Shown here: positions 12,763-47,018 of the stretch, piece after piece
Layout of the letters: every line of letters begins with the position of its first letter
Position numbering within the stretch: the first letter of the stretch is position 1
IMG/VR virus record: IMGVR_UViG_3300035698_035366
Span: 232,120-296,119 of that record
Length of the DNA stretch: 64,000 nucleotides
Reading direction: 5' to 3' (one strand)
Notes under the pieces: generated by a model
The model's database searches: none
What the model was told of the DNA's origin: nothing
What the model saw: only the letters and a program-made list of their open reading frames with translations
Program-made: the position numbers and the translations under genes

Positions 12763-12837
12763 CGCCCCATAGTTTATCGGTTTAGAATTCCGGTTTTTCA
12801 CACCGGCGAGCGGGGTTCGATTCCCCGTGGGGCGACC
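12763..12837 (+). tRNA. tRNA-Glu(TTC)
   Basis: cgcccca/tggggcg acceptor; ccggt-ttTTCac-accgg. Confidence 0.9.
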
Positions 12838-12851
12838 CAGTTAAAATTTAT

Positions 12852-12924
12852 AGCGGGTTGGAGAAGTAGTTATCTCGACGTCCTCATAAGGCGTAGGTCG
12901 GCAGTGCAATTCTGTCACCCGCAA
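12852..12924 (+). tRNA. tRNA-Met(CAT), initiator-like
   Basis: acgtc-ctCATaa-ggcgt; mismatched 1:72; T-loop variant gtgcaattc. Confidence 0.8.
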
Positions 12925-13040
12925 CAAAACTTGGCTCTCGACTGACCGTCCCGATATTAAGAGCAAAGGTCATATGATATTTAATTATCTGCCACAAGCA
13001 GATATGAAGGTCATTAAAAAATTGCCGCCAAGTATTTTAT

Positions 13041-13115
13041 GCTCCGTTAGCTCATTGGTGGAGCGGGACACTGAAGATGTCCGCGTAGGTAGTTCGATTC
13101 TATCACGGAGCACCA
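13041..13115 (+). tRNA. tRNA-Phe(GAA)
   Basis: ggaca-ctGAAga-tgtcc; CCA end. Confidence 0.92.
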
Positions 13116-13121
13116 ATTTAT

Positions 13122-13197
13122 GCCTTTCAAGCTAATCTAGAGAAAGCGACGGATTGAAGACCCGTAGAGCCTGGAGCGTAACCAGGGAAAGGCACCA
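13122..13197 (+). tRNA. tRNA-Phe(GAA), non-canonical T-loop
   Basis: acgga-ttGAAga-cccgt; T-loop agcgtaa; CCA. Confidence 0.8.
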
Positions 13198-13301
13198 AAC
13201 ATTATTTGGTCACTGCAAAGTGTGTTAGCGACGGCTAATAGTTTAGGTGAGTATAGCACTCTTAAAGGGTACAGAACCGTCGCCTAATGCCAATGTTTTA
13301 T

Positions 13302-13390
13302 AAGGGTTGATCCTGCCCGCGGTATCAAACCCGTGGTCTTGAATAAGGCAGGAAGCAGGACGAGGGGAGCGTTACCTCCAACCTTTGCTA
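13302..13390 (+). tRNA. Atypical Trp-like tRNA with rearranged D region and ambiguous anticodon loop (tatcaaac)
   Basis: aagggttg/caaccttt acceptor, G73; tcctgc pairs with gcagga 3' of the anticodon arm. Confidence 0.5.
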
Positions 13391-13396
13391 ATTTAT

Positions 13397-13476
13397 AGGG
13401 GTGCCTGTATCGGTGAACTAAGCCGTCTCCAAAACGGTGCTTCGGCCTGGGAGTTCGAATCTCTCCACCCCTGCCA
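13397..13476 (+). tRNA. tRNA-Trp(CCA)
   Basis: gccgt-ctCCAaa-acggt; G73-CCA; odd D arm. Confidence 0.85.
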
Positions 13477-13485
13477 ATATAATAT

Positions 13486-13570
13486 GGGAAGGTAAAGCTA
13501 GTGGCTCTAGCAAGTGGTCTGTAAAACCACTCTCTTCGGGGGCGAGGATCGATACCTCACTTTCCCACCA
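13486..13570 (+). tRNA. tRNA-Tyr(GTA)
   Basis: gtggt-ctGTAaa-accac; long variable arm; CCA. Confidence 0.88.
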
Positions 13571-13772: not shown

Positions 13773-13850
13773 CGCCCCATAGTTTATCGGTTTTAGAACG
13801 CCGGGTTCTCAACCCGGAAAGCGCGGGTTCAACTCCCCGTGGGGCGACCA
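13773..13850 (+). tRNA. tRNA-Glu(CTC)
   Basis: ccggg-ttCTCaa-cccgg; paralog of 12763; CCA. Confidence 0.88.
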
Positions 13851-14136: not shown

Positions 14137-14211
14137 GTTCCTGATGCCGACGAAGTGAGGCCTTGGATTGCAAATCCAAAGTACCGGATGCAAGCGCCGG
14201 CGGGAACTCCA
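14137..14211 (+). tRNA. tRNA-Cys(GCA)
   Basis: ttgga-ttGCAaa-tccaa; U73-CCA; variant T-loop. Confidence 0.8.
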
Positions 14212-14311
14212 AAACAATACTTGACACTTATAAATAGATGTGTTAGTATTACAGAATAAGCATTGCGCTTATAACGCCATAATGGCAGTCAACATGATAA
14301 AGGAAAAGACA

Positions 14312-14650: not shown

Positions 14651-14764
14651 TTCAACAATTTGCATTACAGTCCACAGCGTTCAAGAGCTTAGGCATTAGG
14701 TGGCTACTGTGGTTGAACCCGTTCAAATCGGGTTAAGAGACTCTTGATAATGCAAAGATTTTAT

Positions 14765-14840
14765 GGACCATGACTCAGCAAGGAACGAGACCTGCTTTAC
14801 ATGCAGGATTTGCGGGGAGCGTTACCTCGATGGTCCACCA
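14765..14840 (+). tRNA. tRNA-Val(TAC), non-canonical T-loop
   Basis: cctgc-ttTACat-gcagg; T-loop agcgtta; CCA. Confidence 0.82.
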
Positions 14841-14845
14841 AATTA

Positions 14846-14982
14846 TGAGGTAGTTGGCTAGGTTGGCGGTTCGACTCCGTCGTTCCTGATGGTCAGGTGT
14901 GGTTCGAGTCCACGTTAAATTAAGCGGAAAACAAATAGGGTAGCACCCGCCTATTAAGGTTCAACTCCTTAATACCTCACCA
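14846..14982 (+). ncRNA. tRNA-like RNA with three T-arm hairpins
   Basis: tgaggta/tacctca-CCA acceptor enclosing ggttcgactcc, ggttcgagtcc and ggttcaactcc hairpins; no anticodon arm. Confidence 0.6.
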
Positions 14983-15053
14983 ATATAGTGTGCGCCAAAT
15001 GGCGAAGGCTCGGTCGCTCCGAGCATCTTGCGGGCCAAATTGGCCCGCATTAT

Positions 15054-15129
15054 CCGGGTGTGGGAAAGTCTGGCTTAATCCGTTCGCTTTGGGAGCGAAA
15101 GACCGCAGGTTCAAATCCTGCCCCCCGGA
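15054..15129 (+). tRNA. tRNA-Pro(TGG)
   Basis: ttcgc-ttTGGga-gcgaa. Confidence 0.85.
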
Positions 15130-15149
15130 CAGAGAAATTATAAACATAA

Positions 15150-15225
15150 CAGGGTATAGCTCAATCTGGTAGAGTAGGGGCCTCGGAAGCTTCGGGTGCC
15201 GGTTCGAATCCGGCTATCCTGACCA
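15150..15225 (+). tRNA. tRNA-Pro(CGG)
   Basis: ggggc-ctCGGaa-gcttc; CCA. Confidence 0.9.
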
Positions 15226-15235
15226 ATAAAACAAT

Positions 15236-15320
15236 GGGTGGCGCAGCTAATGCGATGTCTGGGACCGACGCGGGCTCTTAATCCGTGAACCAAGGGGTTC
15301 AATTCCCTCGCCACCCGCCA
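15236..15320 (+). tRNA. tRNA-Lys(CTT) with expanded D region
   Basis: gcggg-ctCTTaa-tccgt; gggtggc/gccaccc; ~25-nt D region. Confidence 0.7.
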
Positions 15321-15326
15321 ATTTAT

Positions 15327-15408
15327 CCCTGAGTGGCGGAACGGTATACGTAGCGAGCTTAAACCTCGTGGCTTCGGCATGTGAGTTCGACTCTCACCTT
15401 AGGGACCA
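15327..15408 (+). tRNA. tRNA-Leu(TAA)
   Basis: gcgag-ctTAAac-ctcgt; variable arm; CCA. Confidence 0.9.
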
Positions 15409-15418
15409 ATAAAATAAT

Positions 15419-15494
15419 GGACCGGTAGCTCAGAGGCAGTAGCGACGGGCTCTTAACCCGTAGGTCGAGATTTCGAAATTCTCCCGGTTCACCA
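15419..15494 (+). tRNA. tRNA-Lys(CTT)
   Basis: acggg-ctCTTaa-cccgt; CCA. Confidence 0.9.
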
Positions 15495-15545
15495 AAAATA
15501 TTGACATTAAACATAGATATGTGTATAGTTTATAAATACAAAATT

Positions 15546-15631
15546 GCCTGAGTGGCGGAACCGGTATACGCGAAGGTCTCAAAAACCTTTGTCCTTGCGG
15601 CATGTGAGTTCGAATCTCACCTCAGGCACCA
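15546..15631 (+). tRNA. tRNA-Leu(CAA)
   Basis: aaggt-ctCAAaa-acctt; CCA. Confidence 0.92.
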
Positions 15632-15674
15632 ATATATAAATTTAGGCAGGATTAATCCGTAAGTCCTATTTTAT

Positions 15675-15753
15675 GCCCGAGTGGTCAAATTGGTAAAGAC
15701 GTCCGCCTAAGAAGCGGAAGATTTTGTGGGTTCGAGTCCCACCTTGGGCACCA
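15675..15753 (+). tRNA. tRNA-Leu(AAG)
   Basis: tccgc-ctAAGaa-gcgga; A34 anticodon; CCA. Confidence 0.88.
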
Positions 15754-16192: not shown

Positions 16193-16269
16193 TCCTAGCG
16201 GTCCCTGTCGGCAAGGGAGCGGCGCTGTTAACGCCGTTGTTCCAGGTTCGAGCCCTGGGCTAGGAGCCA
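16193..16269 (+). tRNA. tRNA-Asn(GTT)
   Basis: cggcg-ctGTTaa-cgccg; tcctagc/gctagga; G73-CCA. Confidence 0.85.
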
Positions 16270-16409: not shown

Positions 16410-16493
16410 GCGACGCGTAGGCGAGAAGGTTCTGCCGCTGGGCTTCCACCCCAGTCCGAAAGGTGTAGGGTTCGATTCCCTCGCGTCGCTCCA
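16410..16493 (+). tRNA. tRNA-Gly(TCC) with 8/4 fold and long variable arm
   Basis: gcgacgcg/cgcgtcgc 8-bp acceptor, 4-bp T stem aggg/ccct, ctggg-ctTCCac-cccag, U73-CCA. Confidence 0.75.
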
Positions 16494-16668: not shown

Positions 16669-16742
16669 GCTCCTGTGATGTTCTGGGAACATATCCGGCT
16701 GTCTACCGGACGAGGTGGGTTCAATTCCCATCAGGAGCGCCA
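16669..16742 (+). tRNA. tRNA-Asp(GTC)
   Basis: tccgg-ctGTCta-ccgga; G73-CCA. Confidence 0.85.
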
Positions 16743-16745
16743 ATT

Positions 16746-16818
16746 GGGCGTGTGGTGAAGCGGTTAACACAGTGGATTGTCTATCCACCATTCGCAGGTT
16801 CAAGTCCTGTCACGCTCG
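16746..16818 (+). tRNA. tRNA-Asp(GTC)
   Basis: gtgga-ttGTCta-tccac. Confidence 0.87.
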
Positions 16819-16868
16819 CAAAGCTTAAATACTAAATAGTATATAATAATATTATTGAGGTTTAAATT

Positions 16869-17560: not shown

Positions 17561-17650
17561 ACTTGGCGTAGCTCAGGGATGCTTGATAAGCAGGGTAGAG
17601 CAGCCGCGCGAGAACAGCGGTGTGACGGTGGTTCGAAACCATCCCCAAGT
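17561..17650 (+). ncRNA. tRNA-like RNA with a hairpin inserted in the D loop and a 9-nt anticodon loop
   Basis: tagctcag[ggatgcttgataagcag]ggtagagc; gccgc-gcgagaaca-gcggt; ggttcgaaacc. Confidence 0.55.
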
Positions 17651-17821: not shown

Positions 17822-17902
17822 AGCTTAGAAGTGGATGGGAATTGACACCTTGTTACTCTCCCAGGTAATGTAGGATGCAAGCCACGCTAGGCGTAAAATT
17901 AT

Positions 17903-17980: not shown

Positions 17981-17990
17981 AAACAAATAG

Positions 17991-18147
17991 GTGAACGGTA
18001 GTAGCCTTTGATGTGCGGATGGAGTTCGATTCTCCTACTGGATGGGTTCGACTCCCACCCGGGCTTGGTTTAGCAAAACATCATACGCGAGAGCGTGTCG
18101 CGTCAACATTGGTCGATCCAACGGAAACCAAGGATTGAATGGCGCAC
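17991..18147 (+). ncRNA. Structured RNA with two tandem T-arm hairpins
   Basis: ggagttcgattctcc and gggttcgactccc side by side; tgatgt/acatca and cttggttt/aaaccaag pairings. Confidence 0.5.
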
Positions 18148-19582: not shown

Positions 19583-19657
19583 GGTCTGTTAGTACAGTGG
19601 CTAGTACCCCCGCCTGATGAGCGGGTAACTCCAGTTCGAATCTGGAACGGACCACCA
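19583..19657 (+). tRNA. tRNA-Ile(GAT)
   Basis: cccgc-ctGATga-gcggg; CCA. Confidence 0.88.
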
Positions 19658-19681: not shown

Positions 19682-19751
19682 AGCGAGTTGGCCTGGGGCC
19701 GCGCAGTGTTTTGAGCTCTGCTGGGAGGGATCGTAACCTTCACCCGCTGCT
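19682..19751 (+). tRNA. Degenerate tRNA-Gln(TTG)-like
   Basis: gcagtg-ttTTGag-ctctgc; mini D arm; T-loop atcgtaa. Confidence 0.5.
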
Positions 19752-19760
19752 AAAATTTAT

Positions 19761-19834
19761 GGGCTTGTAGCTTAGTTGGCTAAAGCATTCGGTTGATAAC
19801 CGAAAGACCGCTGGTTCGAGTCCAGCCAGGCCCA
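19761..19834 (+). tRNA. tRNA-Ile(GAT)
   Basis: ttcgg-ttGATaa-ccgaa. Confidence 0.92.
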
Positions 19835-19851
19835 CCCAATTTTTTAATCAT

Positions 19852-19927
19852 GGTCTTGTAGTGTTAGCGGCAAGCACGCTGGTTTTGTATTCCAGTAGCC
19901 GGAGTTCGAATCTCCGCGGGACCTCCA
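19852..19927 (+). tRNA. tRNA-Thr(TGT)
   Basis: ctggt-ttTGTat-tccag; CCA. Confidence 0.82.
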
Positions 19928-19939
19928 ATTAGAAGCTTT

Positions 19940-20014
19940 GCCCTTAAAGCATATAAGGTGATGCACGGCTCCCGTAAAGCTGTGAACCACGTTCGAGTCG
20001 TGGTAAGGGCACCA
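19940..20014 (+). tRNA. tRNA-Thr(CGT)
   Basis: cggct-ccCGTaa-agctg; CCA. Confidence 0.82.
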
Positions 20015-20020
20015 ATTTAT

Positions 20021-20097
20021 TGCGGAGTGGAGCAGTGGTCAGCTCGTCGGTCTCATAAGCCGAAGGTCGAAGGTTCGAATCCTTCCTCACGCAACCA
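20021..20097 (+). tRNA. tRNA-fMet(CAT)
   Basis: tgcggagtggagcagtggtcagctcg initiator-type 5' half; ctCATaa; CCA. Confidence 0.88.
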
Positions 20098-20106: not shown

Positions 20107-20187
20107 CCTCCGGCCGCTGGGACGGGTTGTGGTCTTCTAAGCCCTTGTCTTTGAACTAGCTAGGTTCGATTCCTAGACGGAGGACCA
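20107..20187 (+). tRNA. Atypical tRNA-Arg(TCT)
   Basis: ggt-ctTCTaa-gcc; mini D arm; long variable region; ctaggttcgattcctag; CCA. Confidence 0.6.
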
Positions 20188-20870: not shown

Positions 20871-20940
20871 GCCTTGACCGACTGGACCGGAGTTTGGCCT
20901 CCTAAGCTAAAACCTGCAGGTTCGAATCCTGCTCAGGGCA
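20871..20940 (+). tRNA. tRNA-Arg(CCT), shortened D arm
   Basis: ttggc-ctCCTaa-gctaa; gcaggttcgaatcctgc. Confidence 0.75.
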
Positions 20941-21003
20941 CGAAAAATAACATTTGATAATGAAATAATAATATGTTAAATTATGTTTTGATAGGAGAAC
21001 AAA

Positions 21004-23767: not shown

Positions 23768-23836
23768 GGCGGTCGTGCAAGGTCACAGTTACCCTTCATA
23801 CGGGTGATCTGCCAGGCGCAATACCTGGGTCCGCTA
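23768..23836 (+). tRNA. Atypical tRNA-Met(CAT)
   Basis: ttaccc-ttCATac-gggtga; mini D arm; T arm ccagg-cgcaata-cctgg. Confidence 0.6.
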
Positions 23837-23840
23837 CAAA

Positions 23841-23974
23841 CGAGCCGAAGACAAATGGGTTATCATCTTGAAAATGGCCAGCGGGGGTTCGAATCCCTCA
23901 CCTTCCACTAATTTATATATGGGAGGTTAGTGTAGCGGATAGCACGGAAACGCTCCATAGTCATAACTTGCTCG
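23841..23974 (+). ncRNA. Y RNA-like (YrlA-type) RNA
   Basis: cgagcCGAAg.../...cttgctcg terminal stem with the GNCGAAG motif; T arm precedes a closed acceptor stem (accttcca/tgggaggt) then the D arm; cat-ctTGAaa-atg hairpin. Confidence 0.8.
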
Positions 23975-23980: not shown

Positions 23981-24055
23981 GGGGTACGCTCTGGGGAAGC
24001 GGTTTGCACCTGCAATGCGAATGTCTGCCGAATTCGATTTTCGGGTACTCCACCA
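23981..24055 (+). tRNA. tRNA-Ala(TGC), atypical
   Basis: G3:U70; ttgca-ccTGCaa-tgcga; CCA. Confidence 0.75.
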
Positions 24056-24722: not shown

Positions 24723-24805
24723 GGAAGCTTAATTGGGCTGGGCCCGAGACCGCCTTGAAAGCGGATCGTACCGAGAGGTATGGGGTTCGATTCCTCAGGC
24801 TTCCG
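24723..24805 (+). tRNA. tRNA-Ser(TGA)
   Basis: ccgc-ctTGAaa-gcgg; long variable arm; G73. Confidence 0.87.
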
Positions 24806-25168: not shown

Positions 25169-25256
25169 GGAAAGTAAATCTAGCAGGGTCTAGAGGGGGA
25201 TTGCTAATCCTTTCGCACTTGAAAAATAGTGTTCGGTTCGAGTCCGATGCTTTCCT
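25169..25256 (+). tRNA. tRNA-Ser(GCT)
   Basis: gggga-ttGCTaa-tcctt; long variable arm. Confidence 0.85.
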
Positions 25257-25260
25257 CAAA

Positions 25261-25377
25261 GGGCCGATAATAAAAGGTTACCCAAACAGCAGGTCGTGAG
25301 TTCAAACCTCACTCGCAGTCATTGTTGATTGTGATAGCTCAGTTGGTAGAGCAGCCGTCATTACGCTTTTATTGCCC
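25261..25377 (+). ncRNA. Y RNA-like (YrlA-type) RNA
   Basis: gggcCGA..aataaaag/cttttatt-gccc stem; T arm, closed acceptor tcgcagtca-ttgt-tgattgtga, then D arm tagctcagttggtagagc. Confidence 0.8.
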
Positions 25378-25393
25378 ACTTGCCCTTTACTTT

Positions 25394-26429: not shown

Positions 26430-26503
26430 AGGGGGATAGTATAATGGTAGTGCAGCGGGTTCTGATCCCGCTGGTCGGGGTTCGATTCCCTGTCCCCCTG
26501 CCA
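26430..26503 (+). tRNA. tRNA-Gln(CTG)
   Basis: gcggg-ttCTGat-cccgc; CCA. Confidence 0.92.
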
Positions 26504-26688
26504 AATGAGAAAATTTATAATTATCTCAATATTTTGTTTTCTAACAAGCTGTACATCATATAGCCAATGTGCCAAGAATGGTGAAAATTGGGGGTATGTT
26601 TATGGTATATTTAAAACTAAAAATCCAGTTAAAATTAAAATCTATTCAATAGTAGGCCAAGAAATAGGTTCTAAATATTGCAAATAAC

Positions 26689-26760
26689 GCCGGTATAGTG
26701 ATAATGGTAGCACGAGGCATTGGTAATGCTTTAGTGGTGGTTCAATTCCTCCTATCGGCA
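26689..26760 (+). tRNA. tRNA-Thr(GGT)
   Basis: aggca-ttGGTaa-tgctt. Confidence 0.87.
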
Positions 26761-26872
26761 CTCAATTAAAAGGTTGACTAATGATGTAATCGTGTTATAA
26801 TAAAACATATTAAGGGAATGCCACGCGCCCATGCATATTGCAGAAAAACGTAAACTCCAATGGAGAAGCACA

Positions 26873-27662: not shown

Positions 27663-28526
27663 ATGACAGGATACACAACAAGAATTGCACCAAGCCCAAC
27701 GGGTGATATGCACCTGGGGACCGCTCGCACGGCTTATTTCAATTGGCTGATGGCTCGAGCATCAGGTGGTAAATTCATTCTTCGTATTGATGATACTGAT
27801 CTCGCAAGGAACGATCAGAAACATATTGATATTATTCTAGAGACAATGGAGTGGCTTGGGTTAACTTATGATGAGCTAGAATATCAGAGCAAACGTATCG
27901 ATGTGTATTATCGAGCAACAAATGATCTTGTCAAAAAGGGATTTACGACTACATTAGAGAATGGTGCAATTGCTGTTAATCTATCTTCTGTGATTGATTT
28001 CCCAACCACATGGCGCGATGAGATTTCAGGTGATATTAATATCACATCAACCAACCACGATCAAACAGATGGTATGATTCTTATTAAAGGAAATGGATAT
28101 CCGGGTTACAATTGGGCTTCGGTGGTTGATGATGTTGATCTTGGTGTAGATTATATTATTCGAGGCCATGATCATATCACAAACACTTCAAGCCAAGCAA
28201 TTCTTTATAAGTTACTAGATAAGCCATTGCCCAAATTTGCGCATGTTGGTTTAATTCACGCCAATAAAAAGAAAATGTCCAAGCGTGATGGTGCTGCGAG
28301 TATGATGCAGTATAAAGCCGATGGGTATGATCCAGACGCATTGTTGAATTTTATGCTTCGTCTTGGATGGGGGCCAACTATCGACGATAAAACGACTAAG
28401 ACTATTGACAAGGATCGTGCATTAGAGTTGTTTATTAATGGTGGACGAATGCGATCCGCCCCATCAAATTTAGATACAGCAATGCTAAATTCATATGATA
28501 GAAAATATAAGGCTAGAAAGAAATAA
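27663..28526 (+). CDS. Minimal glutamyl-tRNA synthetase-like protein (catalytic domain only; GluQ-RS-like)
   Basis: RIAPSPTGDMHLGTARTA, LRIDDTD, IRGHDH, KMSKR; 287 aa, no Zn-cysteine cluster, no anticodon-binding domain. Confidence 0.88.
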   Translation: MTGYTTRIAPSPTGDMHLGTARTAYFNWLMARASGGKFILRIDDTDLARNDQKHIDIILETMEWLGLTYDELEYQSKRIDVYYRATNDLVKKGFTTTLENGAIAVNLSSVIDFPTTWRDEISGDINITSTNHDQTDGMILIKGNGYPGYNWASVVDDVDLGVDYIIRGHDHITNTSSQAILYKLLDKPLPKFAHVGLIHANKKKMSKRDGAASMMQYKADGYDPDALLNFMLRLGWGPTIDDKTTKTIDKDRALELFINGGRMRSAPSNLDTAMLNSYDRKYKARKK

Positions 28527-31924: not shown

Positions 31925-32001
31925 GCGCCCGTAGCTCAGCTGGATAGAGCAACAGATTTCTAATCTGTGGGTCGCAGGTTCAAATCCTGCCGGGCGCACC
32001 A
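31925..32001 (+). tRNA. tRNA-Arg(TCT)
   Basis: Canonical; acaga-ttTCTaa-tctgt; CCA. Confidence 0.95.
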
Positions 32002-32819: not shown

Positions 32820-32900
32820 GTCCTGTCAACGTGAGATGCGTTGCTCCGGAGGTGATATCACCGGAGTAGGAGTGCGGTGCAATACCGACGCAGGACTCCA
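32820..32900 (+). ncRNA. tRNA-like RNA without a canonical anticodon loop
   Basis: gtcctgt/gcaggac-tCCA; ctccgg..ggtgatatcacc..ggag arm; cggtgcaataccg T arm. Confidence 0.5.
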
Positions 32901-33610
32901 AAATTTGCGGCTGTGAAAACCGGTAAGTAGCAGTTGCGAGATCATCGTGTCGTGTTATCCTCCTTCCTTTAACGGTAGGTTCGGTGGTTCGACTCCAAAT
33001 AGACACGGTGTGTAATAGAAAGAGCGTGGTGGCGAGGCTTTGAATAGCACGGGATAACACAACTTTTTAAGAATTATGGACTGAAGGTGGACGTATGCCC
33101 TGGGATTGAGTTATCATCAATTAAATCGACGCGTAGGTTTGTTGTTAGTTAGCCAATCAAAATCGGACAGAACCTGGCTTAACAGCCGAAAGGACTTAGG
33201 GGCATATTTTAGAGGCATCGGCGGGCGACTATCTTAAACGTGATAGCAAGTGCTGATCGAGCCCATCGCGCTCGATGGGGCCGGAAGCTAAAAGAGTCGG
33301 CAAAATGGAGCCAAGCTGTGGGAGTTAAATCTCACAGCCCAGATTCGTCCGAATGGACATGTTTTAACAAGGAGAGAAGAAATGGGAAAGAAAACGCTTA
33401 AAGATAAAGTTGTCGACGTAAACGACCCAGCGTATCTAAAAGAGCTCCTTCAAAAGGCTCTTCCGTTCCTCGAAAGTTATGATCTAATGGGAACTGGTGG
33501 TCTTGTTGATCGCTCTGAATATGGCGAAATGAATATGTTGGAGAAGGAAATTGCCGAGGCTATCGGTGAAAACTCCAACGATTATGGTTTTCATAACTCG
33601 AGTGGTTAAA

Positions 33611-34938: not shown

Positions 34939-35082
34939 TACCCGTGATAACCAGCGGGCCATGGTTGGATAGTGCCGGGGCAGGCAAAAAAGCGATTTCG
35001 ATATCGTAGCTGTAATGGTTAGCAGTTCAGGTTGGATAATAGTTGTGCCATAAAACGGTTCGAATCCGTCGAATTTTAAGAG

Positions 35083-35877: not shown

Positions 35878-35952
35878 GCCCTGTTAGTTCAACGGCAGAA
35901 CGGCGCCCTCATAAGGCGACAGTTGGGGGTTCGAATCCCTCACGGGGCACCA
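35878..35952 (+). tRNA. tRNA(CAT) Met or Ile2
   Basis: cgcc-ctCATaa-ggcg; A73-CCA. Confidence 0.88.
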
Positions 35953-38128: not shown

Positions 38129-38203
38129 GCCCTTTTAGCTCAATGGATTTAGAGCGTATCCCTCCGAAGGATAAGGTCGCGGGTTCGATCCCCGCCAAGG
38201 GCT
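38129..38203 (+). tRNA. tRNA-Arg(CCG)
   Basis: tatcc-ctCCGaa-ggata. Confidence 0.88.
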
Positions 38204-38706
38204 CATGAAAAGCGAAAAGGAAATAAGTGTACCTGAAAAAACACTAGAGGATTTCTATGCTAAGTGCGGAAAAATCCTTGAAATAGAGCATACTTGGGTA
38301 ACACCACATGTTCGAAAAGGCGGGCGTTGGAATCGCAAACTTGGTAATGGTCGTTTCTCAGGATACGGAGTAATTCGTCCCTGGGGATCAGGTTATCAAG
38401 TTATGAGTCGATCCAATGGTACCAAATTGTTTAACACTCAACAAGAGGTTTATGAGTTCCTCGAAAGATAAAACTCTTTTTAGATCGAATTTAATATCCC
38501 ATATTTTGACCAGTTTTGAAACGGACAATTTGTTCCTGTTCCAACTGCTTGAAATCAAGGTGATCATCTTCCGGAATAAGTACCGTTGCCAGTGTCGACC
38601 ATGTTCCAGCGTCGACGACGCATTCAATGCCAAACAAGCGCATTGCAACAACCAGGCCAATCGTTCCAACTTGTTCTTCAATCATTTTATTCTCCAGTTC
38701 CAAAAT

Positions 38707-43703: not shown

Positions 43704-44152
43704 TAAAATTGACTTAGCATTTCCGATAATATAAATTAAATAAAAACAACGGAGAACAAAATGAACTACCCCGAAATTACCGTCGAATGCCCCTCATCTA
43801 TAAACGAATTTTTGGGACTTTCTTTTGAGCATCAAGCAATAATCAAAGAACAAAATCAAAAAATCGCGCAGGAAAACACACAATTAATTGAAGACCAAAT
43901 TTTCATCGCAATTGACGATGAAGCAAAGAAAGTTTTAACTGAACTAAAAATTAAAGAACTACGTTATATTGTTGACCAACGTGTAATATTTCCCTGGAAC
44001 GAGCGTGATATAGCTGCTCGAGAATTGTATATTATGGGGTATGATGTTCATAATCATTACATTTTAGAAAAATATAACGAACGATAAGGTTGACGCCTTT
44101 CCATTTTGTGTTATAATAATGACATAACGCAAGCAGCAACACGGAGATCGAA

Positions 44153-44503
44153 ATGCTTATTAATGTTTATCACAAGGATATGAGCAACGAAAAGACCGCA
44201 GTTTTTGAACAGGTTGCAACTGTTAAAACTGACATCGTTGGTGTTATGAACGCTTTGGAATATGCATACCGTTGGACAAACAACGTTGAAGGCTCTTGGA
44301 GTAGTAAAGAAGCAATCCTCGAGTATGATGGTGAAACTTATCCCAATGGCGACTTGAACGACAATGTTGAAGTTACTGCACCGCTCCCCACGCATTTGGG
44401 TAGGACAATGGGACATCGAAGTACATCAAGGTTCGACGAGATGGAAATTGTTGAGACAGGCGAACGCTTCCGTGTTGCAATGTGTGGCTTTGAAAAGGTT
44501 TAA
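44153..44503 (+). CDS. Hypothetical early protein
   Basis: LEYAYRWTNNVEGSWS...RSTS..D motif; promoter module. Confidence 0.65.
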   Translation: MLINVYHKDMSNEKTAVFEQVATVKTDIVGVMNALEYAYRWTNNVEGSWSSKEAILEYDGETYPNGDLNDNVEVTAPLPTHLGRTMGHRSTSRFDEMEIVETGERFRVAMCGFEKV

Positions 44504-45301
44504 TTGAGATCGATAAAGAATAAGCTTCATGATGCGCCAGGCCCAACAAACCCGGACGACATTATCTCCAAGGATCCTACCACTGTTTACACCGTGGTGT
44601 AATTAAGCGGGATCCACCTTACACTAAGGTTCGGAGTATCAAGGGTACAGCGGTCAATGAGGCTTTAATTTTTTAATTGGAGAAGACAATGGGCGACGCA
44701 TTTAAATGGGAATTAACATATATCGATAAAGATCATATCGGTGTATCATGCAATGGGCGCATCTTTGTTTTGCGTGAGCGCGGAGAAGATGGTCAAATTT
44801 GGTGGGATATTTTTTATATCGACGAATACAGAATAGTTGATAGTGATGTTGATGCCCCTTATTGGCAAGACAGTATTGGTAGCTTTGAAGCCGCGCTTGA
44901 ATGTATCCCGGATATGATTGGAAATTGGACCGACGAAGAACTAGAAGAATTGGGTGAAAGCGATGACTAAATTCAAAGACGTTACGATCTCGGCCGAAGA
45001 TTTTGAGAAGTTGACAAATCTTTTGACTCTTGCTAATGTTGGTAAGGAGTCATGCCAGGATCAAAAGGACGTTATTTGGCCCATCTCAAATGAAACTATG
45101 GATGATGCGGTTGAGTTTGGATACGACATTGTTTCTGCAATGGTTGGAAGTTAAATATTTTTGGAACTGGCCCGGCGAAAACGAATAGCCCACTATGGAA
45201 ATGGGGTGAAAGAATTTCCGGGTCTTTTTCATTTTTTTGTTGACACTTAAAAAACAATCTGTTATTATGTATAAATAATAACGTTAAACCCAGTAAGAAA
45301 T

Positions 45302-45374
45302 GGGGCCTTAGCTCATCTGGGAGAGCGACGCCTTTGCAAGGCGTAGGTGGTCGGTTCGAGTCCGACAGGCTCCA
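45302..45374 (+). tRNA. tRNA-Ala(TGC)
   Basis: G3:U70; acgcc-ttTGCaa-ggcgt. Confidence 0.93.
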
Positions 45375-45529
45375 CAAATGTGAAAAGGGGTATTTCCCTT
45401 GTGATGCGGTTGACTGTGTTTACACAGGTATCCTGGAAGGTGAATCTTCTAGAACGCATGAGGGGGTTCGACCGAGACTCTTAATGATCGCGATAACCAG
45501 GCCTTTTGGCATTAAGAGAAACAGTATAT

Positions 45530-45602
45530 GCGGCTATAGCTCAATGGTAGAGCGGTTCGTTGCCAACGAACATACCAGGGTTCGATTCCCTGTAGCCGCT
45601 CC
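45530..45602 (+). tRNA. tRNA-Gly(GCC)
   Basis: gttcg-ttGCCaa-cgaac; U73. Confidence 0.92.
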
Positions 45603-46125
45603 GAAGAAAGAAGATGATATGAAATGGCTTGAAAAAAATAAAGTCGATGTTACTGAAATGTCTGTTGAAGTGCTCGCTAGAGTCGGCATTCCAATTATCG
45701 CTATTGTTGTTCTTGTTCTTTGTTTCCTTCCTGGATTTGCTAAGAGTCTACATGCGGATGATAGTTCTCAAAAATTAAGTAATCATATCGAACGACAATT
45801 GCAATGTTTCTGTAGTGTTTGTTATAAAGGAATTGATTAATGTACACTATTGATAGAAAGAAAGTAGTTTTCGAAACAATTTTAGATATTGACATTTAAC
45901 CAATTTTAATATATTATAAATAATAATACGGTTTGCCCATGAACCGCCTAATTCGTTAGGTTCCCAACTCAGGGAAGAAGCATATGACAAGGATGGTAAC
46001 CCAGTTAGTAGCAATATGCGAAAAGAACAGAGGCCAAGGGTGAGCCATCCGGTGAGATGGACAGGGAGCCAGGCCCCTTAAGATCTGGCGAATATACCGG
46101 GGTGGGTCTATTGGCCCACCCCATT

Positions 46126-46815
46126 TTAATATTTCCAATTATTAATTCTGTCAAGCAATACACTATACGACATATTACTATTATCATTTTTTCTTTTATT
46201 ATCTAAATGAATCATTAATTTGCAATTGGCAGGATGTGCAAGATTTTTTGGATTGTAATCGTTTTTAAATCCTTCCGAAATTGATATTATATGATCACGT
46301 GAAACCCCATTGATATTTTTAGGAAGGTTACTTCTCTTTTGTCCTGGACAAGTATACCATCCATGTTTTTCAATTAATGATAAATTGAAATAATCAGGGA
46401 AATCGAAAACATTAAATTTAAAACGTGATAACTCGTAATATTTTTCTTTTTCTGTTTTAATATAAGGAGACTGTTGTCTCCTGCCACCGCCTGGTCCAAT
46501 GGAACAATATATCTTTCCAGTAATATCGCATTTAATAAAATCGACTTTTCTAAACGGAAAAATTGTTTTTTCTGGGCCACTTTTTAATCGGGGTATTAAA
46601 TTTGTAACTGTAGCCGAGCACGAATGAGAACAATATTTATTTCTTCTTTTTTCATATACCAGTGGTATATTACAATTATTACAAAATTTTGGTTTAGTAT
46701 TATATTTTTCTACACGTGATAATTTTAATTGATTGTTTCGATGTGTTATTTGACAAGACAGGGAACAAAATTTTGGATTTTTTGTCAATTCGTTACAATT
46801 AAGGCACTTTTTCAT
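46126..46815 (-). mobile_element. HNH-type homing endonuclease with N-terminal Cys motifs
   Basis: CLNC..KFCSLSC and CNNC..KYCSHSC; SRDHIISI...HPANC..M.H..N..K; antisense insertion within the tRNA region. Confidence 0.8.
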
Positions 46816-46848
46816 TTGCTTTTCCATGGTCGTTGTGTTATTATAAAC

Positions 46849-46928
46849 TATAAATAATGGAGCGGGACAGCCCCTCTCCATGGTGGGTTTTTGTTGTTAG
46901 AGCAACAAATTACCGCCAATATTATTTA
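46849..46928. promoter_or_regulatory. Structured leader of the HNH gene (motif shared with the GIY-YIG gene)
   Basis: tataaata..gcgggacagccc-ctctccatggt-gggt..ttgttg/caacaa-attaccgc..tattta. Confidence 0.7.
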
Positions 46929-46944
46929 GTATAAATATTAATAT

Positions 46945-47018
46945 GCGAGTGTCGTCCAGTGATAGGGCCTTAGATTTCCAATCTAAAGACGAGGGTTTGA
47001 TTCCCTCCACCCGCTCCA
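46945..47018 (+). tRNA. tRNA-Gly(TCC)
   Basis: ttaga-ttTCCaa-tctaa; U73-CCA. Confidence 0.88.

What the first reader, a model, noticed from the sequence alone, without database searches (positions are those of the whole stretch)
12763..47018. Complete, redundant and modification-independent tRNA set
SEEN: ~52 tRNA genes cover all 20 amino acids, often as a canonical plus a structurally deviant isodecoder (Phe, Asp x3, Ile, Ala, Gly, Gln, Arg-TCT, Lys x5). Anticodons rare in bacteria occur: Arg GCG + TCG instead of ACG, Ile TAT, Leu AAG. KNOWN: bacterial ACG needs TadA (I34) and AUA decoding needs TilS (lysidine). INFERENCE: the phage can decode CGN and AUA without these host enzymes, and the deviant copies hedge against sequence- or structure-specific tRNases.
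Basis: partly seen in the sequence, partly recalled or inferred. Interest (0 to 1): 0.65.

Follow-up and report, generated by a model that had tools for sequence, protein, structure and literature searches.

The report
Jumbo-phage tRNA island, many irregular
A salt-lake giant phage carries about 50 tRNA genes that by anticodon serve all 20 amino acids, and some 20 of them have conserved but non-textbook shapes that standard tRNA finders miss, so the set is real and unusual although its claimed independence from host enzymes is only partly backed.

Summary
One strand of window 12763-47018 carries 50 tRNA genes. Both ARAGORN and Rfam accept 29, ARAGORN alone accepts 5, and 16 are found only below threshold or by hand. 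About a dozen further tRNA-like RNAs lie among them. All 20 amino acids are covered only if irregular genes count: Cys, Ser, Trp, Tyr and Val have no textbook copy. Arg-GCG, Arg-TCG, Ile-TAT and Leu-AAG exist, and no Arg-ACG exists.

The irregular genes are not chance hits or fresh decay. They carry perfect stems and encoded CCA, keep the discriminator and identity bases that fit their anticodon, and are 97-98% identical in a related contig whose spacers are 42-50% identical. They fall into classes:
- T-loops with A54 and U58 swapped.
- 8/4 Sec-like Ser and Gly tRNAs.
- A long-variable-arm tRNA(UAU) with strong covariation across five phage lineages.
- A pair of Arg tRNAs without a D-arm.
- A Lys pair with an insertion before the D-arm.

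"Modification-independent" overreaches. The closest relative uses Arg-ACG, Leu-AAG carries A34, the record shows no full-length synthetase, and UAU decoding elsewhere needs an adapted IleRS and ribosome. The tRNase-hedging idea is plausible but untested, because no RNA data exist.

One "tRNA" is a YrlA-like Y RNA, and the phage encodes a Ro protein.

The parts
12763..12837 (+). tRNA-Glu(TTC), canonical
   Evidence: ARAGORN 121, Rfam 57 bits
12852..12925 (+). tRNA-Met(CAT) with an A1xA72 mismatch and T-loop TGCAATT (G55); no CCA
   Evidence: ARAGORN 113 only; threading
13041..13115 (+). tRNA-Phe(GAA), canonical, CCA encoded
13122..13197 (+). Irregular tRNA-Phe(GAA): T-loop AGCGTAA (A54/U58), no GG in the D-loop, A73, CCA
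   Evidence: ARAGORN 92; no Rfam hit; passes the strict scan
13301..13388 (+). tRNA-like module with an AGCGTTA T-loop, no CCA and no clear anticodon arm
13397..13476 (+). Irregular tRNA-Trp(CCA): weak D-arm, 10-nt variable hairpin, G73, CCA; the only Trp gene
   Evidence: ARAGORN 96; Rfam Sec model 28 bits
13486..13570 (+). Irregular tRNA-Tyr(GTA): long variable arm, T-loop ATCGATA (A54), A73, CCA; the only Tyr gene
   Evidence: ARAGORN 97
13773..13850 (+). tRNA-Glu(CTC), canonical
14137..14211 (+). Irregular tRNA-Cys(GCA): T-loop TGCAAGC (G55), U73, CCA; the only Cys gene
   Evidence: found by the CCA/acceptor scan and threaded
14655..14760 (+). tRNA-like module: closing stem, hairpin, canonical T-arm, small hairpin
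14765..14840 (+). Irregular tRNA-Val(TAC): T-loop AGCGTTA (A54/U58), A73, CCA; the only Val gene
   Evidence: ARAGORN 87; passes the strict scan
14845..14985 (+). 141-nt module with three T-arm-like hairpins, closed by a 6-7 bp stem and ending in ACCA
15054..15225 (+). tRNA-Pro(TGG) 15054-15130 and tRNA-Pro(CGG) 15150-15225, canonical
15236..15320 (+). Irregular tRNA-Lys(CTT): about 8 extra nt between the acceptor and the D-arm, G73, CCA
   Evidence: shares the insertion with 31205
15327..15753 (+). tRNA-Leu(TAA) 15327-15408, Lys(CTT) 15419-15494, Leu(CAA) 15546-15631, Leu(AAG) 15675-15753; the last has a short 7-nt variable region
16193..16269 (+). tRNA-Asn(GTT), G73, CCA
   Evidence: ARAGORN 113; no Rfam hit listed
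16410..16493 (+). tRNA-Gly(TCC) with an 8/4 acceptor/T arrangement, a 12-nt variable region (11 nt in the 7/5 threading), U73, G1-C2-G3, CCA
   Evidence: ARAGORN 116; Rfam tRNA 41 bits and Sec model 41 bits
16573..16663 (+). T-arm-bearing module without a matching acceptor stem
16669..16819 (+). Two tRNA-Asp(GTC), 16669-16742 and 16746-16819; both have U at position 37
17563..17650 (+). tRNA-like RNA with a hairpin inserted in the D-loop, a 9-nt anticodon-position loop and no CCA
   Evidence: 97% identical to L002
17661..17739 (+). tRNA-Leu(TAG), short variable region
   Evidence: compensatory changes against L002
17748..17821 (+). Irregular Asp(GTC)-like gene: 6-nt T-loop, C37, G73, CCA
   Evidence: ARAGORN 99. 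Its stems covary with L002, but the anticodon loop and CCA are not kept there
17822..17900 (+). Conserved non-tRNA RNA element
   Evidence: 95% identical to L002
17903..17980 (+). tRNA-Arg(GCG) without a D-arm: 7-nt connector, 19-nt variable region, G73, CCA
   Evidence: 75% identical to 18159. L002 has Arg-ACG at this place
17985..18080 (+). Module with two tandem T-arm hairpins
   Evidence: compensatory changes against L002
18159..18237 (+). tRNA-Arg(TCG) without a D-arm: 7-nt connector, 20-nt variable region, G73, CCA
   Evidence: Rfam 31 bits; 97% identical to L002
18935..19011 (+). tRNA-His(GTG) with G-1
19583..19657 (+). tRNA-Ile(GAT)
19682..19750 (+). Irregular tRNA-Gln(TTG): T-loop ATCGTAA (A54/U58), tiny D-arm, G73, no CCA; absent from L002
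   Evidence: ARAGORN 103.5
19760..20097 (+). tRNA-Ile(GAT) 19760-19838, Thr(TGT) 19852-19927, Thr(CGT, C33) 19940-20014, initiator-like Met(CAT) 20021-20097 with a bulged acceptor
20107..20187 (+). Irregular tRNA best threaded as Arg(TCT), loop CTTCTAA: 14-nt variable region, A73, CCA
   Evidence: 98% identical to L002, with a U.G to C-G change in the proposed anticodon stem
20871..20941 (+). tRNA-Arg(CCT) with a reduced D-arm
   Evidence: ARAGORN 105; Rfam 28.3 bits, just under the cut-off
23800..23910 (+). T-arm-bearing module without an acceptor partner
23981..24055 (+). Irregular tRNA-Ala(TGC): G3:U70 kept, A73, CCA, C33, reduced D-arm
   Evidence: ARAGORN 90; passes the strict scan
24723..24805 (+). 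8/4 tRNA-Ser(TGA): Sec-like long D-stem, G73, no CCA
   Evidence: Rfam Sec model 43 bits
24816..24889 (+). tRNA-Gln(TTG), canonical
25169..25256 (+). 8/4 tRNA-Ser(GCT), U73, no CCA
   Evidence: ARAGORN 92; threading
25258..25385 (+). YrlA-like Y RNA: closing stem, T-arm, closed acceptor-like hairpin, D-arm
   Evidence: Rfam RF02553 24.6 bits, E 0.023; covaries with L012
25394..25477 (+). 8/4 tRNA-Ser(CGA), G73, no CCA
   Evidence: Rfam Sec model 40 bits; ortholog in L012
25698..25788 (+). Long-variable-arm tRNA(TAT): 7/5 arrangement, 4-bp D-stem with a 4-nt loop, T-loop AGCGTTA, A73, CCA
   Evidence: five-lineage alignment with 98% of cells paired and 14 of 25 pairs compensatory
26430..26761 (+). 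tRNA-Gln(CTG) 26430-26503 and tRNA-Thr(GGT) 26689-26761
27663..28526 (+). GluRS catalytic-domain-only paralog (287 aa) embedded in the island
   Evidence: PF00749 at 210 bits; TIGR00464 at 260 bits, below its cut-off
31205..31290 (+). Irregular tRNA-Lys(TTT): the same insertion before the D-arm as 15236, U73, CCA; the only AAA decoder
31302..31384 (+). tRNA-Lys(CTT) with an 11-nt variable region
31395..31459 (+). 5'-half remnant of tRNA-Lys(CTT) 15419
31925..32001 (+). tRNA-Arg(TCT), canonical
   Evidence: Rfam 74.5 bits
32724..32812 (+). Irregular second tRNA-Leu(AAG): G32, 21-nt variable arm, C73, no CCA
   Evidence: ARAGORN 102 only
32900..33010 (+). T-arm-like module, weak
34992..35078 (+). 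T-arm-bearing tRNA-like module without a clear anticodon arm
   Evidence: ARAGORN 89.7
35878..35952 (+). tRNA-Met(CAT), elongator-like or Ile2-like
38129..38204 (+). tRNA-Arg(CCG)
45302..45602 (+). tRNA-Ala(TGC) 45302-45375 and tRNA-Gly(GCC) 45530-45602
46945..47018 (+). tRNA-Gly(TCC), canonical

Best explanation
The region is the tRNA island of a jumbo phage of at least 296 kb from salt lakes.

Shown:
- 50 co-oriented tRNA genes whose anticodons cover all 20 amino acids and nearly every sense codon.
- About 12 further tRNA-like RNAs, one of them a YrlA-like Y RNA.

Inferred mechanism:
- The genes are transcribed as arrays and matured by host RNase P/Z, helped by the phage CCA-adding enzyme for the 16 genes that lack encoded CCA.
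- They are charged by host synthetases, because the record holds no full synthetase.
- They give the AT-rich phage (GC3 0.29) a self-supplied decoding set when the host tRNA pool is ill-matched, run down or attacked.

The roughly 21 irregular genes are working isoacceptors of old, stable structural lineages, not decaying duplicates. Their classes are:
(i) T-loops in which the U54:A58 pair is swapped to A54:U58, often with G55.
(ii) 8/4 Sec-like Ser and Gly tRNAs.
(iii) A 7/5 long-variable-arm tRNA(UAU).
(iv) An Arg-GCG/Arg-TCG pair without a D-arm.
(v) A Lys-CTT/Lys-TTT pair with an insertion before the D-arm.

Use of GCG/UCG/CCG and UAU makes CGN and AUA reading formally independent of TadA and TilS. 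This is a feature of anticodon choice in this phage group, not a general freedom from modification.
For: Reality of the genes: (strict scan: 23 hits in the island, 0.2 per shuffle).

Selection on irregular genes:
- Arg-TCG is 97% identical to relative L002, Arg-TCT-like 20107 is 98%, and Thr-TGT is 99%. Spacers are 42-50% identical.
- The Asp-like gene 17748 differs at 31 of 74 aligned positions from L002 (58% identity), yet read by eye from alignment A1 its four stems stay paired through about nine double-sided changes.
- In the tRNA(UAU) alignment of five lineages, 98.4% of cells are paired and 14 of 25 pairs are compensatory. This includes the variable arm, and anticodon and A73 are invariant.

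A54/U58 T-loops:
- They recur in six window genes and in two genes of sister contig L012.
- Orthologs switch between the two forms.
- None is seen among 26 Tunturi_5 tRNAs.

Chargeability:
- 14 of the 16 genes that lie below ARAGORN's default threshold encode CCA directly after the discriminator.
- Identity marks fit the anticodons, judged against the standard bacterial identity sets: G3:U70 with A73 in Ala_2; U73 in Cys; G73 in Trp and Asp; U73 with G1-C2-G3 in the 8/4 Gly; A73 in Phe_2, Val, Tyr and tRNA(UAU); G73 with a long arm in two Ser.
- Anticodon loops are canonical (Y32-U33-NNN-R37) in nearly all.

The irregular genes are not recent copies of their isoacceptors (about 65% identity).

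Genomic context:
- CCA-adding enzyme present.
- No class Ia, IIa or IIb synthetase.
- No TilS and no TadA-type deaminase.
- AUA makes up 21% of Ile codons.

Precedents: 8/4 tRNA-Ser in phages (PMC5389517) and up to 67 tRNAs in huge phages (PMC7162821).
Against: - No expression, processing or charging data exist. All runs that hold the DNA are DNA contigs.
- Rfam's tRNA model does not score Phe_2, Tyr, Cys, Val, Asp_3 or Arg-GCG even in 2-kb searches.
- The host is unknown, so neither a codon-usage mismatch nor tRNase pressure can be shown.
- Without phage synthetases, host enzymes, EF-Tu and the ribosome must accept the altered elbows and D-arm loss.
- Most allo-tRNA(UAU) species tested by Mukai et al. 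were inactive in E. coli (PMC5389517). E. coli IleRS charges tRNA-Ile(UAU) poorly (PMC3575796).
- The Asp-like gene 17748 does not keep its anticodon loop in L002. A Lys 5' half at 31395 is a plain remnant. So part of the island is not decoding tRNA.
- The tRNA supply does not track codon usage neatly. AAA is 66% of Lys codons, yet both canonical Lys genes are CTT.
Confidence: 0.6

Rival explanations
1. The irregular copies are hedges that escape sequence- or structure-specific host tRNases, and the set is built to be independent of host TadA and TilS.
For: - Phage tRNAs are known to rescue infection from tRNA-cleaving defences (PMC10264068, PMC11464382, PMC11555353).
- Lys, a frequent nuclease target, has four genes of two architectures.
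- All three Asp genes have a pyrimidine at position 37.
- A54/U58 and G55 T-loops would remove the usual T-loop recognition and modification sites.
- There is no Arg-ACG, no TilS and no TadA-type deaminase in the record.
Against: - The irregularities lie in the tRNA body, while the anticodon loops are canonical. The nucleases in the cited papers cut the anticodon loop or arm, or the 3' tail.
- For Cys, Ser, Trp, Tyr and Val the irregular gene is the only copy, so it is not a spare.
- The closest relative uses Arg-ACG.
- Leu-AAG carries A34.
- No RtcB repair ligase is present.
- The host and its defences are unknown.
Confidence: 0.25
2. Many of the irregular elements are not decoders. They are tRNA-like non-coding RNAs: partners of the phage Ro protein, decoys or processing signals, or allo-tRNA-like regulators.
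For: - 25258-25385 has the YrlA architecture, covaries with L012, and the phage encodes a TROVE protein.
- 17563-17650, 17822-17900 and the multi-T-arm modules are conserved but lack a 7-nt anticodon loop or an open acceptor end.
- 17748 keeps its stems but not its anticodon loop.
- Mukai et al. suggest that most allo-tRNA(UAU) species are not used in translation (PMC5389517).
Against: - Sixteen irregular genes do have an open 7- or 8-bp acceptor stem, a 7-nt anticodon loop with U33 and R37, a discriminator that fits the anticodon, and mostly encoded CCA.
- Anticodon TAT and A73 are invariant across five lineages.
- Five amino acids would otherwise be missing from an otherwise complete set.
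Confidence: 0.2
3. The irregular genes are pseudogenes, the debris of duplication and decay in a fast-evolving tRNA island.
For: - A clear 5'-half remnant lies at 31395.
- Several T-arm fragments lack an acceptor stem.
- Gene content differs between the window and L002.
- Scores are low in both tRNA finders.
Against: - 97-98% identity to L002, against 42-50% for spacers.
- Dense compensatory change.
- The irregularities fall into recurring classes rather than being random.
- Identity elements and CCA are retained.
- There is no close similarity to the canonical isoacceptors.
Confidence: 0.08
4. The long-variable-arm A73 tRNA(UAU) is charged by LeuRS, or by another class-II-tRNA synthetase, rather than by IleRS. 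AUA would then be read ambiguously or recoded during infection.
For: - In bacteria, long variable arms are confined to Leu, Ser, Tyr and Sec tRNAs (general knowledge).
- A73 fits Leu and Tyr as well as Ile.
- Its closest island paralogs by identity are Leu-CAA and Leu-TAA, though only at 0.60-0.62.
- Allo-tRNAs with non-cognate anticodons insert Ser or Ala in E. coli (PMC5389517).
Against: - AUA is 21% of the phage's own Ile codons, so misreading would damage phage proteins.
- C4:G69, an IleRS determinant by general knowledge, is present in four of five lineages.
- The 0.6 identity to Leu tRNAs is background level.
Confidence: 0.07

Closest known systems
Large tRNA arrays of huge/jumbo phages (Al-Shayeb et al. 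2020, PMC7162821)
   Same: Tens of co-oriented tRNA genes in a phage of more than 200 kb, with sequences unlike typical host tRNAs, alongside tRNA-related enzymes (here a CCA-adding enzyme and a GluRS paralog).
   Different: That survey counted tRNAs with tRNAscan-SE. Here about 40% of the genes are invisible or marginal to standard finders, and five amino acids depend on them. The record has no full synthetase.
8/4 tRNA-Ser of phages and allo-tRNAs (Mukai et al. 2016, PMC5389517)
   Same: - The three Ser genes and Gly-TCC have an 8-bp acceptor and a 4-bp T-stem.
- The Ser-TGA and Ser-CGA genes also show a Sec-like long D-stem.
- UAU, GCG and GUC, the predominant allo-tRNA anticodons, are exactly the anticodons of three irregular genes here.
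- They sit in polycistronic runs of irregular tRNAs.
   Different: - The tRNA(UAU) here is 7/5 (the T-stem pair at alignment A3 columns 70:86, tRNA 49:65, covaries) and has A73, not G73 or U73.
- Arg-GCG lacks a D-arm rather than being 8/4.
- The setting is a phage tRNA island, not a toxin-antitoxin or transposon neighbourhood.
Nuclease-insensitive phage tRNAs (T5 and mycobacteriophages; PMC10264068, PMC11464382, PMC11555353)
   Same: Phage-supplied isoacceptors, including several Lys genes, that could replace cleaved host tRNAs.
   Different: In those cases escape rests on anticodon-loop changes or on a specific rescuing tRNA. Here the loops are canonical and the body is altered, and no defence system or host is known.
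TilS-independent tRNA-Ile(UAU) of Mycoplasma mobile (PMC3575796)
   Same: UAU anticodon for AUA, with no tilS in the genome that encodes it.
   Different: M. mobile pairs it with an adapted IleRS and ribosome. The phage tRNA has a long variable arm and must rely on an unknown host's enzymes.
Mitochondrial type II/III tRNAs and tRNA-Pyl (review PMC7609411)
   Same: Functional tRNAs that lack G18-G19 and T-Psi-C elbow contacts, or lack the D-arm altogether.
   Different: Those belong to reduced organelle systems or to a dedicated synthetase pair. Here they sit beside canonical tRNAs in one phage, and the T-loop change is a specific 54:58 swap.
YrlA Y RNA with Ro60/Rsr (Chen et al. 2014, PMC4201824)
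   Same: The element at 25258-25385 has the T-arm, closed acceptor-like stem and D-arm inside a closing stem. A TROVE protein is encoded by the phage, as in some mycobacteriophages.
   Different: The score is far below the Rfam cut-off (24.6 against 69). The RNA lies in the tRNA island, about 137 kb from the Ro gene rather than beside it.

Membership tests
Canonical bacterial tRNA (Rfam RF00005 / ARAGORN default) | Score at or above the curated cut-off of the covariance model and of the heuristic finder | tested here: met
   29 genes pass both tools
Canonical bacterial tRNA (Rfam RF00005 / ARAGORN default) | The same cut-offs, applied to the other 21 genes | tested here: not met
   5 pass ARAGORN only. 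16 fall below the ARAGORN default; of these only Arg-TCG reaches the Rfam cut-off, at 31.2 bits
Canonical bacterial tRNA (Rfam RF00005 / ARAGORN default) | T-loop with U54, U55, C56 and A58 | tested here: not met
   Not met in Phe_2, Val, Ile-TAT and Gln_i (A54/U58), in Tyr (A54/A58), or in Cys and Met 12852 (G55)
8/4 tRNA-Ser / allo-tRNA (Mukai et al.) | 8-bp acceptor stem with a 4-bp T-stem | tested here: met
   Met by Ser-TGA, Ser-GCT, Ser-CGA and Gly-TCC 16410. Not met by tRNA(UAU), which is 7/5 with a covarying first T-stem pair
8/4 tRNA-Ser / allo-tRNA (Mukai et al.) | Long variable arm and Sec-like long D-stem with a small loop | tested here: met
   Alignment to the Rfam Sec model at 43 and 40 bits for Ser-TGA and Ser-CGA. 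tRNA(UAU) has the long arm and a 4-nt D-loop
8/4 tRNA-Ser / allo-tRNA (Mukai et al.) | Serine identity (G73 or U73) combined with a non-serine anticodon | tested here: inconclusive
   Gly-TCC 16410 has U73 but also G1-C2-G3, which fits Gly. tRNA(UAU) has A73
TilS-independent tRNA-Ile(UAU) | UAU anticodon in a tRNA, with no tilS in the encoding genome | tested here: met
   Anticodon TAT is invariant in five lineages. Only an 18-bit PP-loop hit was found in the 296-kb record, which is 79% complete
TilS-independent tRNA-Ile(UAU) | Charged with Ile, and reads AUA but not AUG | not testable with these tools
   Needs aminoacylation and ribosome-binding assays. The phage has no IleRS
TadA-independent CGN decoding | GCG plus UCG and/or CCG present, and ACG absent | tested here: met
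   17903, 18159 and 38129 are present. No ACG gene on the + strand even at 80% threshold. The trait is not shared by L002, which has Arg-ACG
YrlA Y RNA | T-arm, closed acceptor-like stem and D-arm enclosed by a terminal stem | tested here: met
   Fold and Rfam alignment; compensatory changes against L012
YrlA Y RNA | Rfam gathering score | tested here: not met
   24.6 bits against 69
YrlA Y RNA | Ro60/TROVE protein in the same genome, usually adjacent | tested here: met
   TROVE hits of 90.5 and 64.7 bits in a 544-aa ORF. It is not adjacent, and no Y RNA lies beside it
Nuclease-insensitive phage tRNA | Anticodon-loop differences from the host tRNA at nuclease recognition sites, or rescue of infection | not testable with these tools
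   Host unknown. The loops are canonical except U/C37 in Asp and C33 in Thr-CGT and Ala_2

The most novel reading that the evidence does not exclude
This phage lineage maintains a second, parallel architecture of working tRNAs. In it the elbow is rebuilt: the U54:A58 pair is swapped to A54:U58, G55 replaces Psi55, and the D-loops are shrunken or absent. These tRNAs would still be charged by host synthetases and used by the ribosome. They would be invisible to host factors that read the T-Psi-C loop, namely TrmA, TruB, elbow-reading nucleases and tRNA sensors. The phage, or the infected cell, could thereby tell phage tRNAs from host tRNAs.
Probability: 0.2. Interest if true: 0.8.

Novelty: new variant of a known kind. 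Interest (0 to 1): 0.58.

Why it matters
- Standard pipelines would report 28-34 tRNAs and only 15 amino acids for this phage. The real island is about 50 genes and formally complete. tRNA counts and claims of "missing" isoacceptors in huge-phage surveys may therefore be systematic underestimates.
- The irregular genes give natural examples of elbow and D-arm designs under selection: the A54:U58 swap, 8/4 Gly, Arg tRNAs without a D-arm, and a long-arm tRNA(UAU). A bacterial translation system apparently tolerates them, which is useful for tRNA engineering.
- They also bear on the open question of why phages carry tRNAs: supply, codon match or counter-defence.
- The co-occurrence of a Y RNA-like gene and a Ro protein in the same phage adds an RNA-surveillance angle.

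Tried and rejected
- Megablast of 20 kb against the phage collection found only short tRNA hits. Tunturi_5 shares one Leu tRNA and four proteins and is not a close relative.
- The search for related loci with the AAA protein and the GluRS paralog in viral contigs found nothing.
- Exact-pattern scans with a conserved Leu-TAA stretch found nothing in viral contigs and only the window's own contig in metagenomes. Relatives covering 12.7-16.8 kb (Phe_2, Trp, Tyr, Cys, Val) were therefore not obtained.
- Homolog search with ORF 14240-14650 found only itself.
- Sequencing runs: 7 salt-lake DNA runs and no RNA. Laying four runs gave only identical low-depth fragments plus cross-hits of other organisms' tRNAs, so there is no variation or expression data.
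- L013, L014 and L019 are 100% identical copies of the window and give no comparison.
- MFE folding z-scores of the odd modules were mostly unremarkable, and I did not use them as evidence.
- I considered a nested D-stem for the Arg-GCG/Arg-TCG pair. I rejected it as inconsistent between the two paralogs and geometrically unlikely, and call them D-arm-less instead.
- I considered MnmC for the DAO protein at 36366-37424. NCBIfam gives only generic glycine or amino-acid oxidase hits.
- No RtcB, TGT, TilS, TadA-type deaminase or class Ia/IIa/IIb synthetase was found in the record, which is 79% complete by CheckV.
- Pairwise identity of irregular genes to their canonical isoacceptors is at background level, so I dropped the 'recent degenerate duplicate' idea.
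- I did not run tRNAscan-SE isotype models, which are not available here.

Full report
**Setting.** The window is the last 64 kb of a single-contig virus record of 296,119 bp with 38% GC. IMG/VR labels the record a provirus and CheckV estimates it 79% complete. The same sequence lies on a 362,903-bp JGI contig and a 119,725-bp ENA contig, both 100% identical over the parts fetched. It occurs in salt-lake metagenomes from seven studies. Every tRNA that ARAGORN finds in the genome lies in the window.

**Checking the observation.**
- ARAGORN at default settings gives 34 tRNAs, all on the + strand between 12763 and 47018.
- Rfam at its gathering score gives 28. With laxer filters 19940 and 16411 also pass.
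- Lowering the ARAGORN threshold to 90% gives 47, against about one per shuffled window.
- The motif GTTCRANYC occurs 52 times on the + strand, 50 of them within 12.8-45.6 kb, and 5 times on the other strand.
- A scan for 7/7 acceptor pairs, 5/5 T-stem pairs and encoded CCA returns 23 places, all in the island. It returns none on the - strand, 0.2 per shuffle and 0-2 in the other 232 kb. Seven of the 23 are genes the default tools miss.
- Threading every candidate by hand gives 50 tRNA genes.
- By anticodon all 20 amino acids are served. Cys, Ser, Trp, Tyr and Val are served only by irregular genes.
- Leu-AAG, Arg-GCG, Arg-TCG, Arg-CCG and Ile-TAT are present. Arg-ACG is absent.

**What the irregular genes look like.** They fall into recurring classes rather than showing random damage.
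- *A54/U58 T-loops.* Phe_2, Val, Ile-TAT, Gln 19682 and the module at 13301 have a T-loop of the form A-(G/U)-C-G-U-(A/U)-A. The usual U54...A58 positions are exchanged to A54...U58. Tyr has A54 with A58. Cys and Met 12852 keep U54 and A58 but have G55.
- *8/4 arrangement.* Ser-TGA, Ser-GCT, Ser-CGA and Gly-TCC 16410 have an 8-bp acceptor and a 4-bp T-stem. Ser-TGA, Ser-CGA and Gly-TCC match the Rfam Sec model at 40-43 bits.
- *Long-arm tRNA(UAU).* The gene at 25698 is 7/5, with a 4-bp D-stem, a 4-nt D-loop and a stem-loop variable arm.
- *No D-arm.* Arg-GCG and Arg-TCG are 75% identical paralogs with no D-arm. Each has a 7-nt connector and a 19-20-nt variable region that shares a conserved motif.
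- *Insertion before the D-arm.* Lys-CTT 15236 and Lys-TTT 31205 share an insertion of about 8 nt before the D-arm.
- *Anticodon loops.* Almost all are canonical. The exceptions are a pyrimidine at position 37 in all three Asp genes and C33 in Thr-CGT and Ala_2.

**Evidence that they are functional RNAs.** A homolog search with the small ORF at 19069-19581 led to related metagenomic contigs. L002 is syntenic with window 16.8-21.7 kb at 73-84% identity. Identities to L002 in that stretch are as follows:

| Element | Identity to L002 |
|---|---|
| Irregular Arg-TCG | 97% |
| Arg-TCT-like gene 20107 | 98% |
| Canonical Thr genes | 95-99% |
| Spacers | 42-50% |

One of the two differences in 20107 turns a U.G pair of my proposed anticodon stem into C-G.

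The Asp-like gene 17748 is only 58% identical to its L002 counterpart. By my reading of alignment A1 its four stems nevertheless stay paired, through about nine changes on both sides.

A second homolog search, with ORF 25860-26417, gave L011 and L012. Together with L003 and L010, these carry an ortholog of the long-arm tRNA(UAU). In the five-lineage alignment:
- 98.4% of cells are paired.
- 14 of 25 pairs show changes on both sides.
- All five helices covary, including the variable arm.
- No shuffle reaches the observed values for four of the five measures (further pair types: 4 of 500), and slid registers give 42-52% pairing.
- Anticodon TAT and A73 never vary.

The A54/U58 form is also a lineage trait. 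L012 has it in its tRNA(UAU) and in Thr-GGT, whereas the window's Thr-GGT and the tRNA(UAU) of L011, L003 and L010 are canonical. None of 26 solid tRNAs of Tunturi_5 has it.

Fourteen of the 16 genes that lie below ARAGORN's default threshold encode CCA right after the discriminator.

The discriminator and the known major identity bases agree with the anticodon. I judged this against the standard bacterial identity sets, from general knowledge:
- G3:U70 and A73 in Ala_2.
- U73 in Cys.
- G73 in Trp and in the Asp genes.
- U73 with G1-C2-G3 in the 8/4 Gly.
- A73 in Phe_2, Val, Tyr and tRNA(UAU).

The irregular genes are no closer to their canonical isoacceptors than to any other tRNA (about 65% identity). 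They are therefore old lineages, not fresh decaying duplicates.

**What is not a tRNA.** About a dozen elements carry a T-arm but no open acceptor stem or no 7-nt anticodon loop.
- The element at 25258-25385 has the order closing stem, T-arm, closed acceptor-like hairpin, D-arm. It aligns to Rfam YrlA (24.6 bits, E 0.023 in a 2.2-kb search, far below the cut-off of 69). Its ortholog in L012 has fully compensatory T-stem and hairpin changes and an invariant D-arm.
- The phage encodes a 544-aa TROVE (Ro60) protein about 137 kb upstream. No Y RNA lies beside that gene. Phage Ro and YrlA pairs are known from mycobacteriophages (PMC4201824).
- The elements 17563-17650 and 17822-17900 are 95-97% identical to L002, so they are conserved RNAs of unknown role.
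- Two modules hold two and three tandem T-arm hairpins.
- 31395-31459 is a 5'-half remnant of Lys-CTT.

**The interpretation.** Formally, GCG with UCG and CCG covers CGN without inosine, and UAU covers AUA without lysidine. The record holds no TadA-type deaminase and only an 18-bit PP-loop hit for TilS. Several results limit the claim:
- L002 carries a canonical Arg-ACG exactly where this phage has Arg-GCG (50% identity across the two genes). The more distant contigs carry a canonical Arg-GCG. GCG is therefore common in the group but not fixed, and the form without a D-arm is specific to this phage.
- Leu-AAG carries A34.
- Three CAT genes are present, and I could not assign them to initiator, elongator or Ile2.
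- The record encodes no class Ia, IIa or IIb synthetase, so all charging falls to the host. In M. mobile, AUA reading by UAU needs an adapted IleRS and ribosome, and E. coli IleRS charges such a tRNA poorly (PMC3575796).
- A GluRS catalytic-domain paralog sits inside the island and a CCA-adding enzyme is encoded elsewhere. The phage therefore invests in tRNA handling rather than avoiding it.

On hedging against tRNases, phage tRNAs do rescue infection from tRNA-cleaving defences (PMC10264068, PMC11464382, PMC11555353). However, the nucleases in the papers I consulted act mainly on the anticodon loop or arm (PMC10264068, PMC12445682, PMC13056530), and one acts on the 3' tail (PMC12851939). Here the loops are canonical and the body differs. 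For five amino acids the irregular gene is the sole copy. The host and its defences are unknown, and no RtcB repair ligase is present.

**Best explanation.** This is a self-supplied, nearly complete adaptor set for an AT-rich jumbo phage (GC3 0.29; AUA is 21% of Ile codons). It is charged by host synthetases. About 40% of its members belong to stable non-canonical structural lineages that remain chargeable. I give this 0.6. The tRNase-hedge reading gets 0.25. A non-decoding role for a larger share of the irregular elements gets 0.2. These three overlap and are not exclusive. Simple decay gets 0.08 and mischarging of tRNA(UAU) gets 0.07.

**Comparison with what is known.**
- Arrays of up to 67 tRNAs are known in huge phages (PMC7162821).
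- 8/4 tRNA-Ser in phages and allo-tRNAs are described, with UAU, GCG and GUC as their predominant anticodons (PMC5389517). Those three anticodons are also the anticodons of three irregular genes here. However, the tRNA(UAU) here is 7/5 with A73, and Arg-GCG lacks a D-arm rather than being 8/4.
- Loss of G18-G19 and T-Psi-C contacts, and loss of the D-arm, are known from mitochondria and tRNA-Pyl (PMC7609411).
- I found no description of a recurrent A54:U58-swapped T-loop class in phage tRNAs. My literature search was limited, though.

I therefore rate the finding as a new variant of a known kind.

**Limits.**
- There is no RNA evidence of any kind.
- No relatives cover 12.7-16.8 kb, where Phe_2, Trp, Tyr, Cys and Val lie.
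- The host is unknown.
- Threading of the most irregular genes (15236, 20107, 31205, 32724) is by hand and could be off in detail.
- Absence of enzymes refers to a record estimated 79% complete.

Noticed in passing
window 25258-25385; G000:C1:120185-121819: A YrlA-like Y RNA sits in the tRNA island, and a 544-aa TROVE/Ro60 protein is encoded about 137 kb away in the same phage. The RNA covaries with its ortholog in L012.
   Followed up: partly
window 27663-28526: A 287-aa GluRS catalytic-domain-only paralog with GluQRS-like architecture. It is closer to the bacterial GluRS model (260 bits) than to GluQRS models (about 160 bits). It is conserved in L011 and lies near the Gln, Thr and Ser tRNAs. 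All three Asp tRNAs have a pyrimidine at position 37.
   Followed up: partly
window 17563-17650 and 17822-17900: Two non-coding elements are 97% and 95% identical to contig L002, whose spacers are 42-50% identical. The first is tRNA-like, with a hairpin inside the D-loop and a 9-nt loop at the anticodon position. Their role is unknown.
   Followed up: partly
window 14845-14985 and 17985-18080: Modules made of three and two tandem T-arm-like hairpins. The second is conserved in L002 with compensatory changes.
   Followed up: partly
window 29410-30519: A 369-aa protein ending in a PEP-CTERM sorting motif (28.7 bits). This hints at a Gram-negative host with an exosortase system.
   Followed up: no
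window 47236-47700 and 47757-48965: A nucleoside 2-deoxyribosyltransferase-like protein (also present in Tunturi_5) and an S41 C-terminal processing peptidase with a PDZ domain, just downstream of the last tRNA.
   Followed up: no
window 30654-30770 / 30939-31052; 34064-34127 / 34327-34390; 34667-34747 / 34865-34944: Three pairs of direct repeats at 74-89% identity in gene-poor stretches of the island, seen as self-hits in BLAST.
   Followed up: no
L002:1281-1357 and L002:1362-1457; L010:529-623: The closest relative carries a class-I-shaped tRNA with anticodon UAA and a 96-nt element that ARAGORN calls Tyr(ATA). A similar 95-nt element is in L010. Both are absent from the window.
   Followed up: no
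window 15675-15753 and 17661-17739; L001:20002-20080: Leu-AAG and Leu-TAG have only a 7-nt variable region in place of the long arm typical of tRNA-Leu. The same short-arm type, 88% identical, occurs in the unrelated Acidobacteria jumbo phage Tunturi_5.
   Followed up: no
window 19069-19581: A small HslV-family peptidase-like ORF (phrog_1040) lies between the His and Ile tRNAs. It is conserved in five related phage contigs, where it sits next to PTH2 and AAA_33 kinase-like genes.
   Followed up: partly
whole record G000: The record is labelled a provirus, but the same DNA lies on a 362,903-bp contig that extends about 64 kb beyond the window's end. The label may reflect trimming of a larger phage genome rather than integration.
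   Followed up: no
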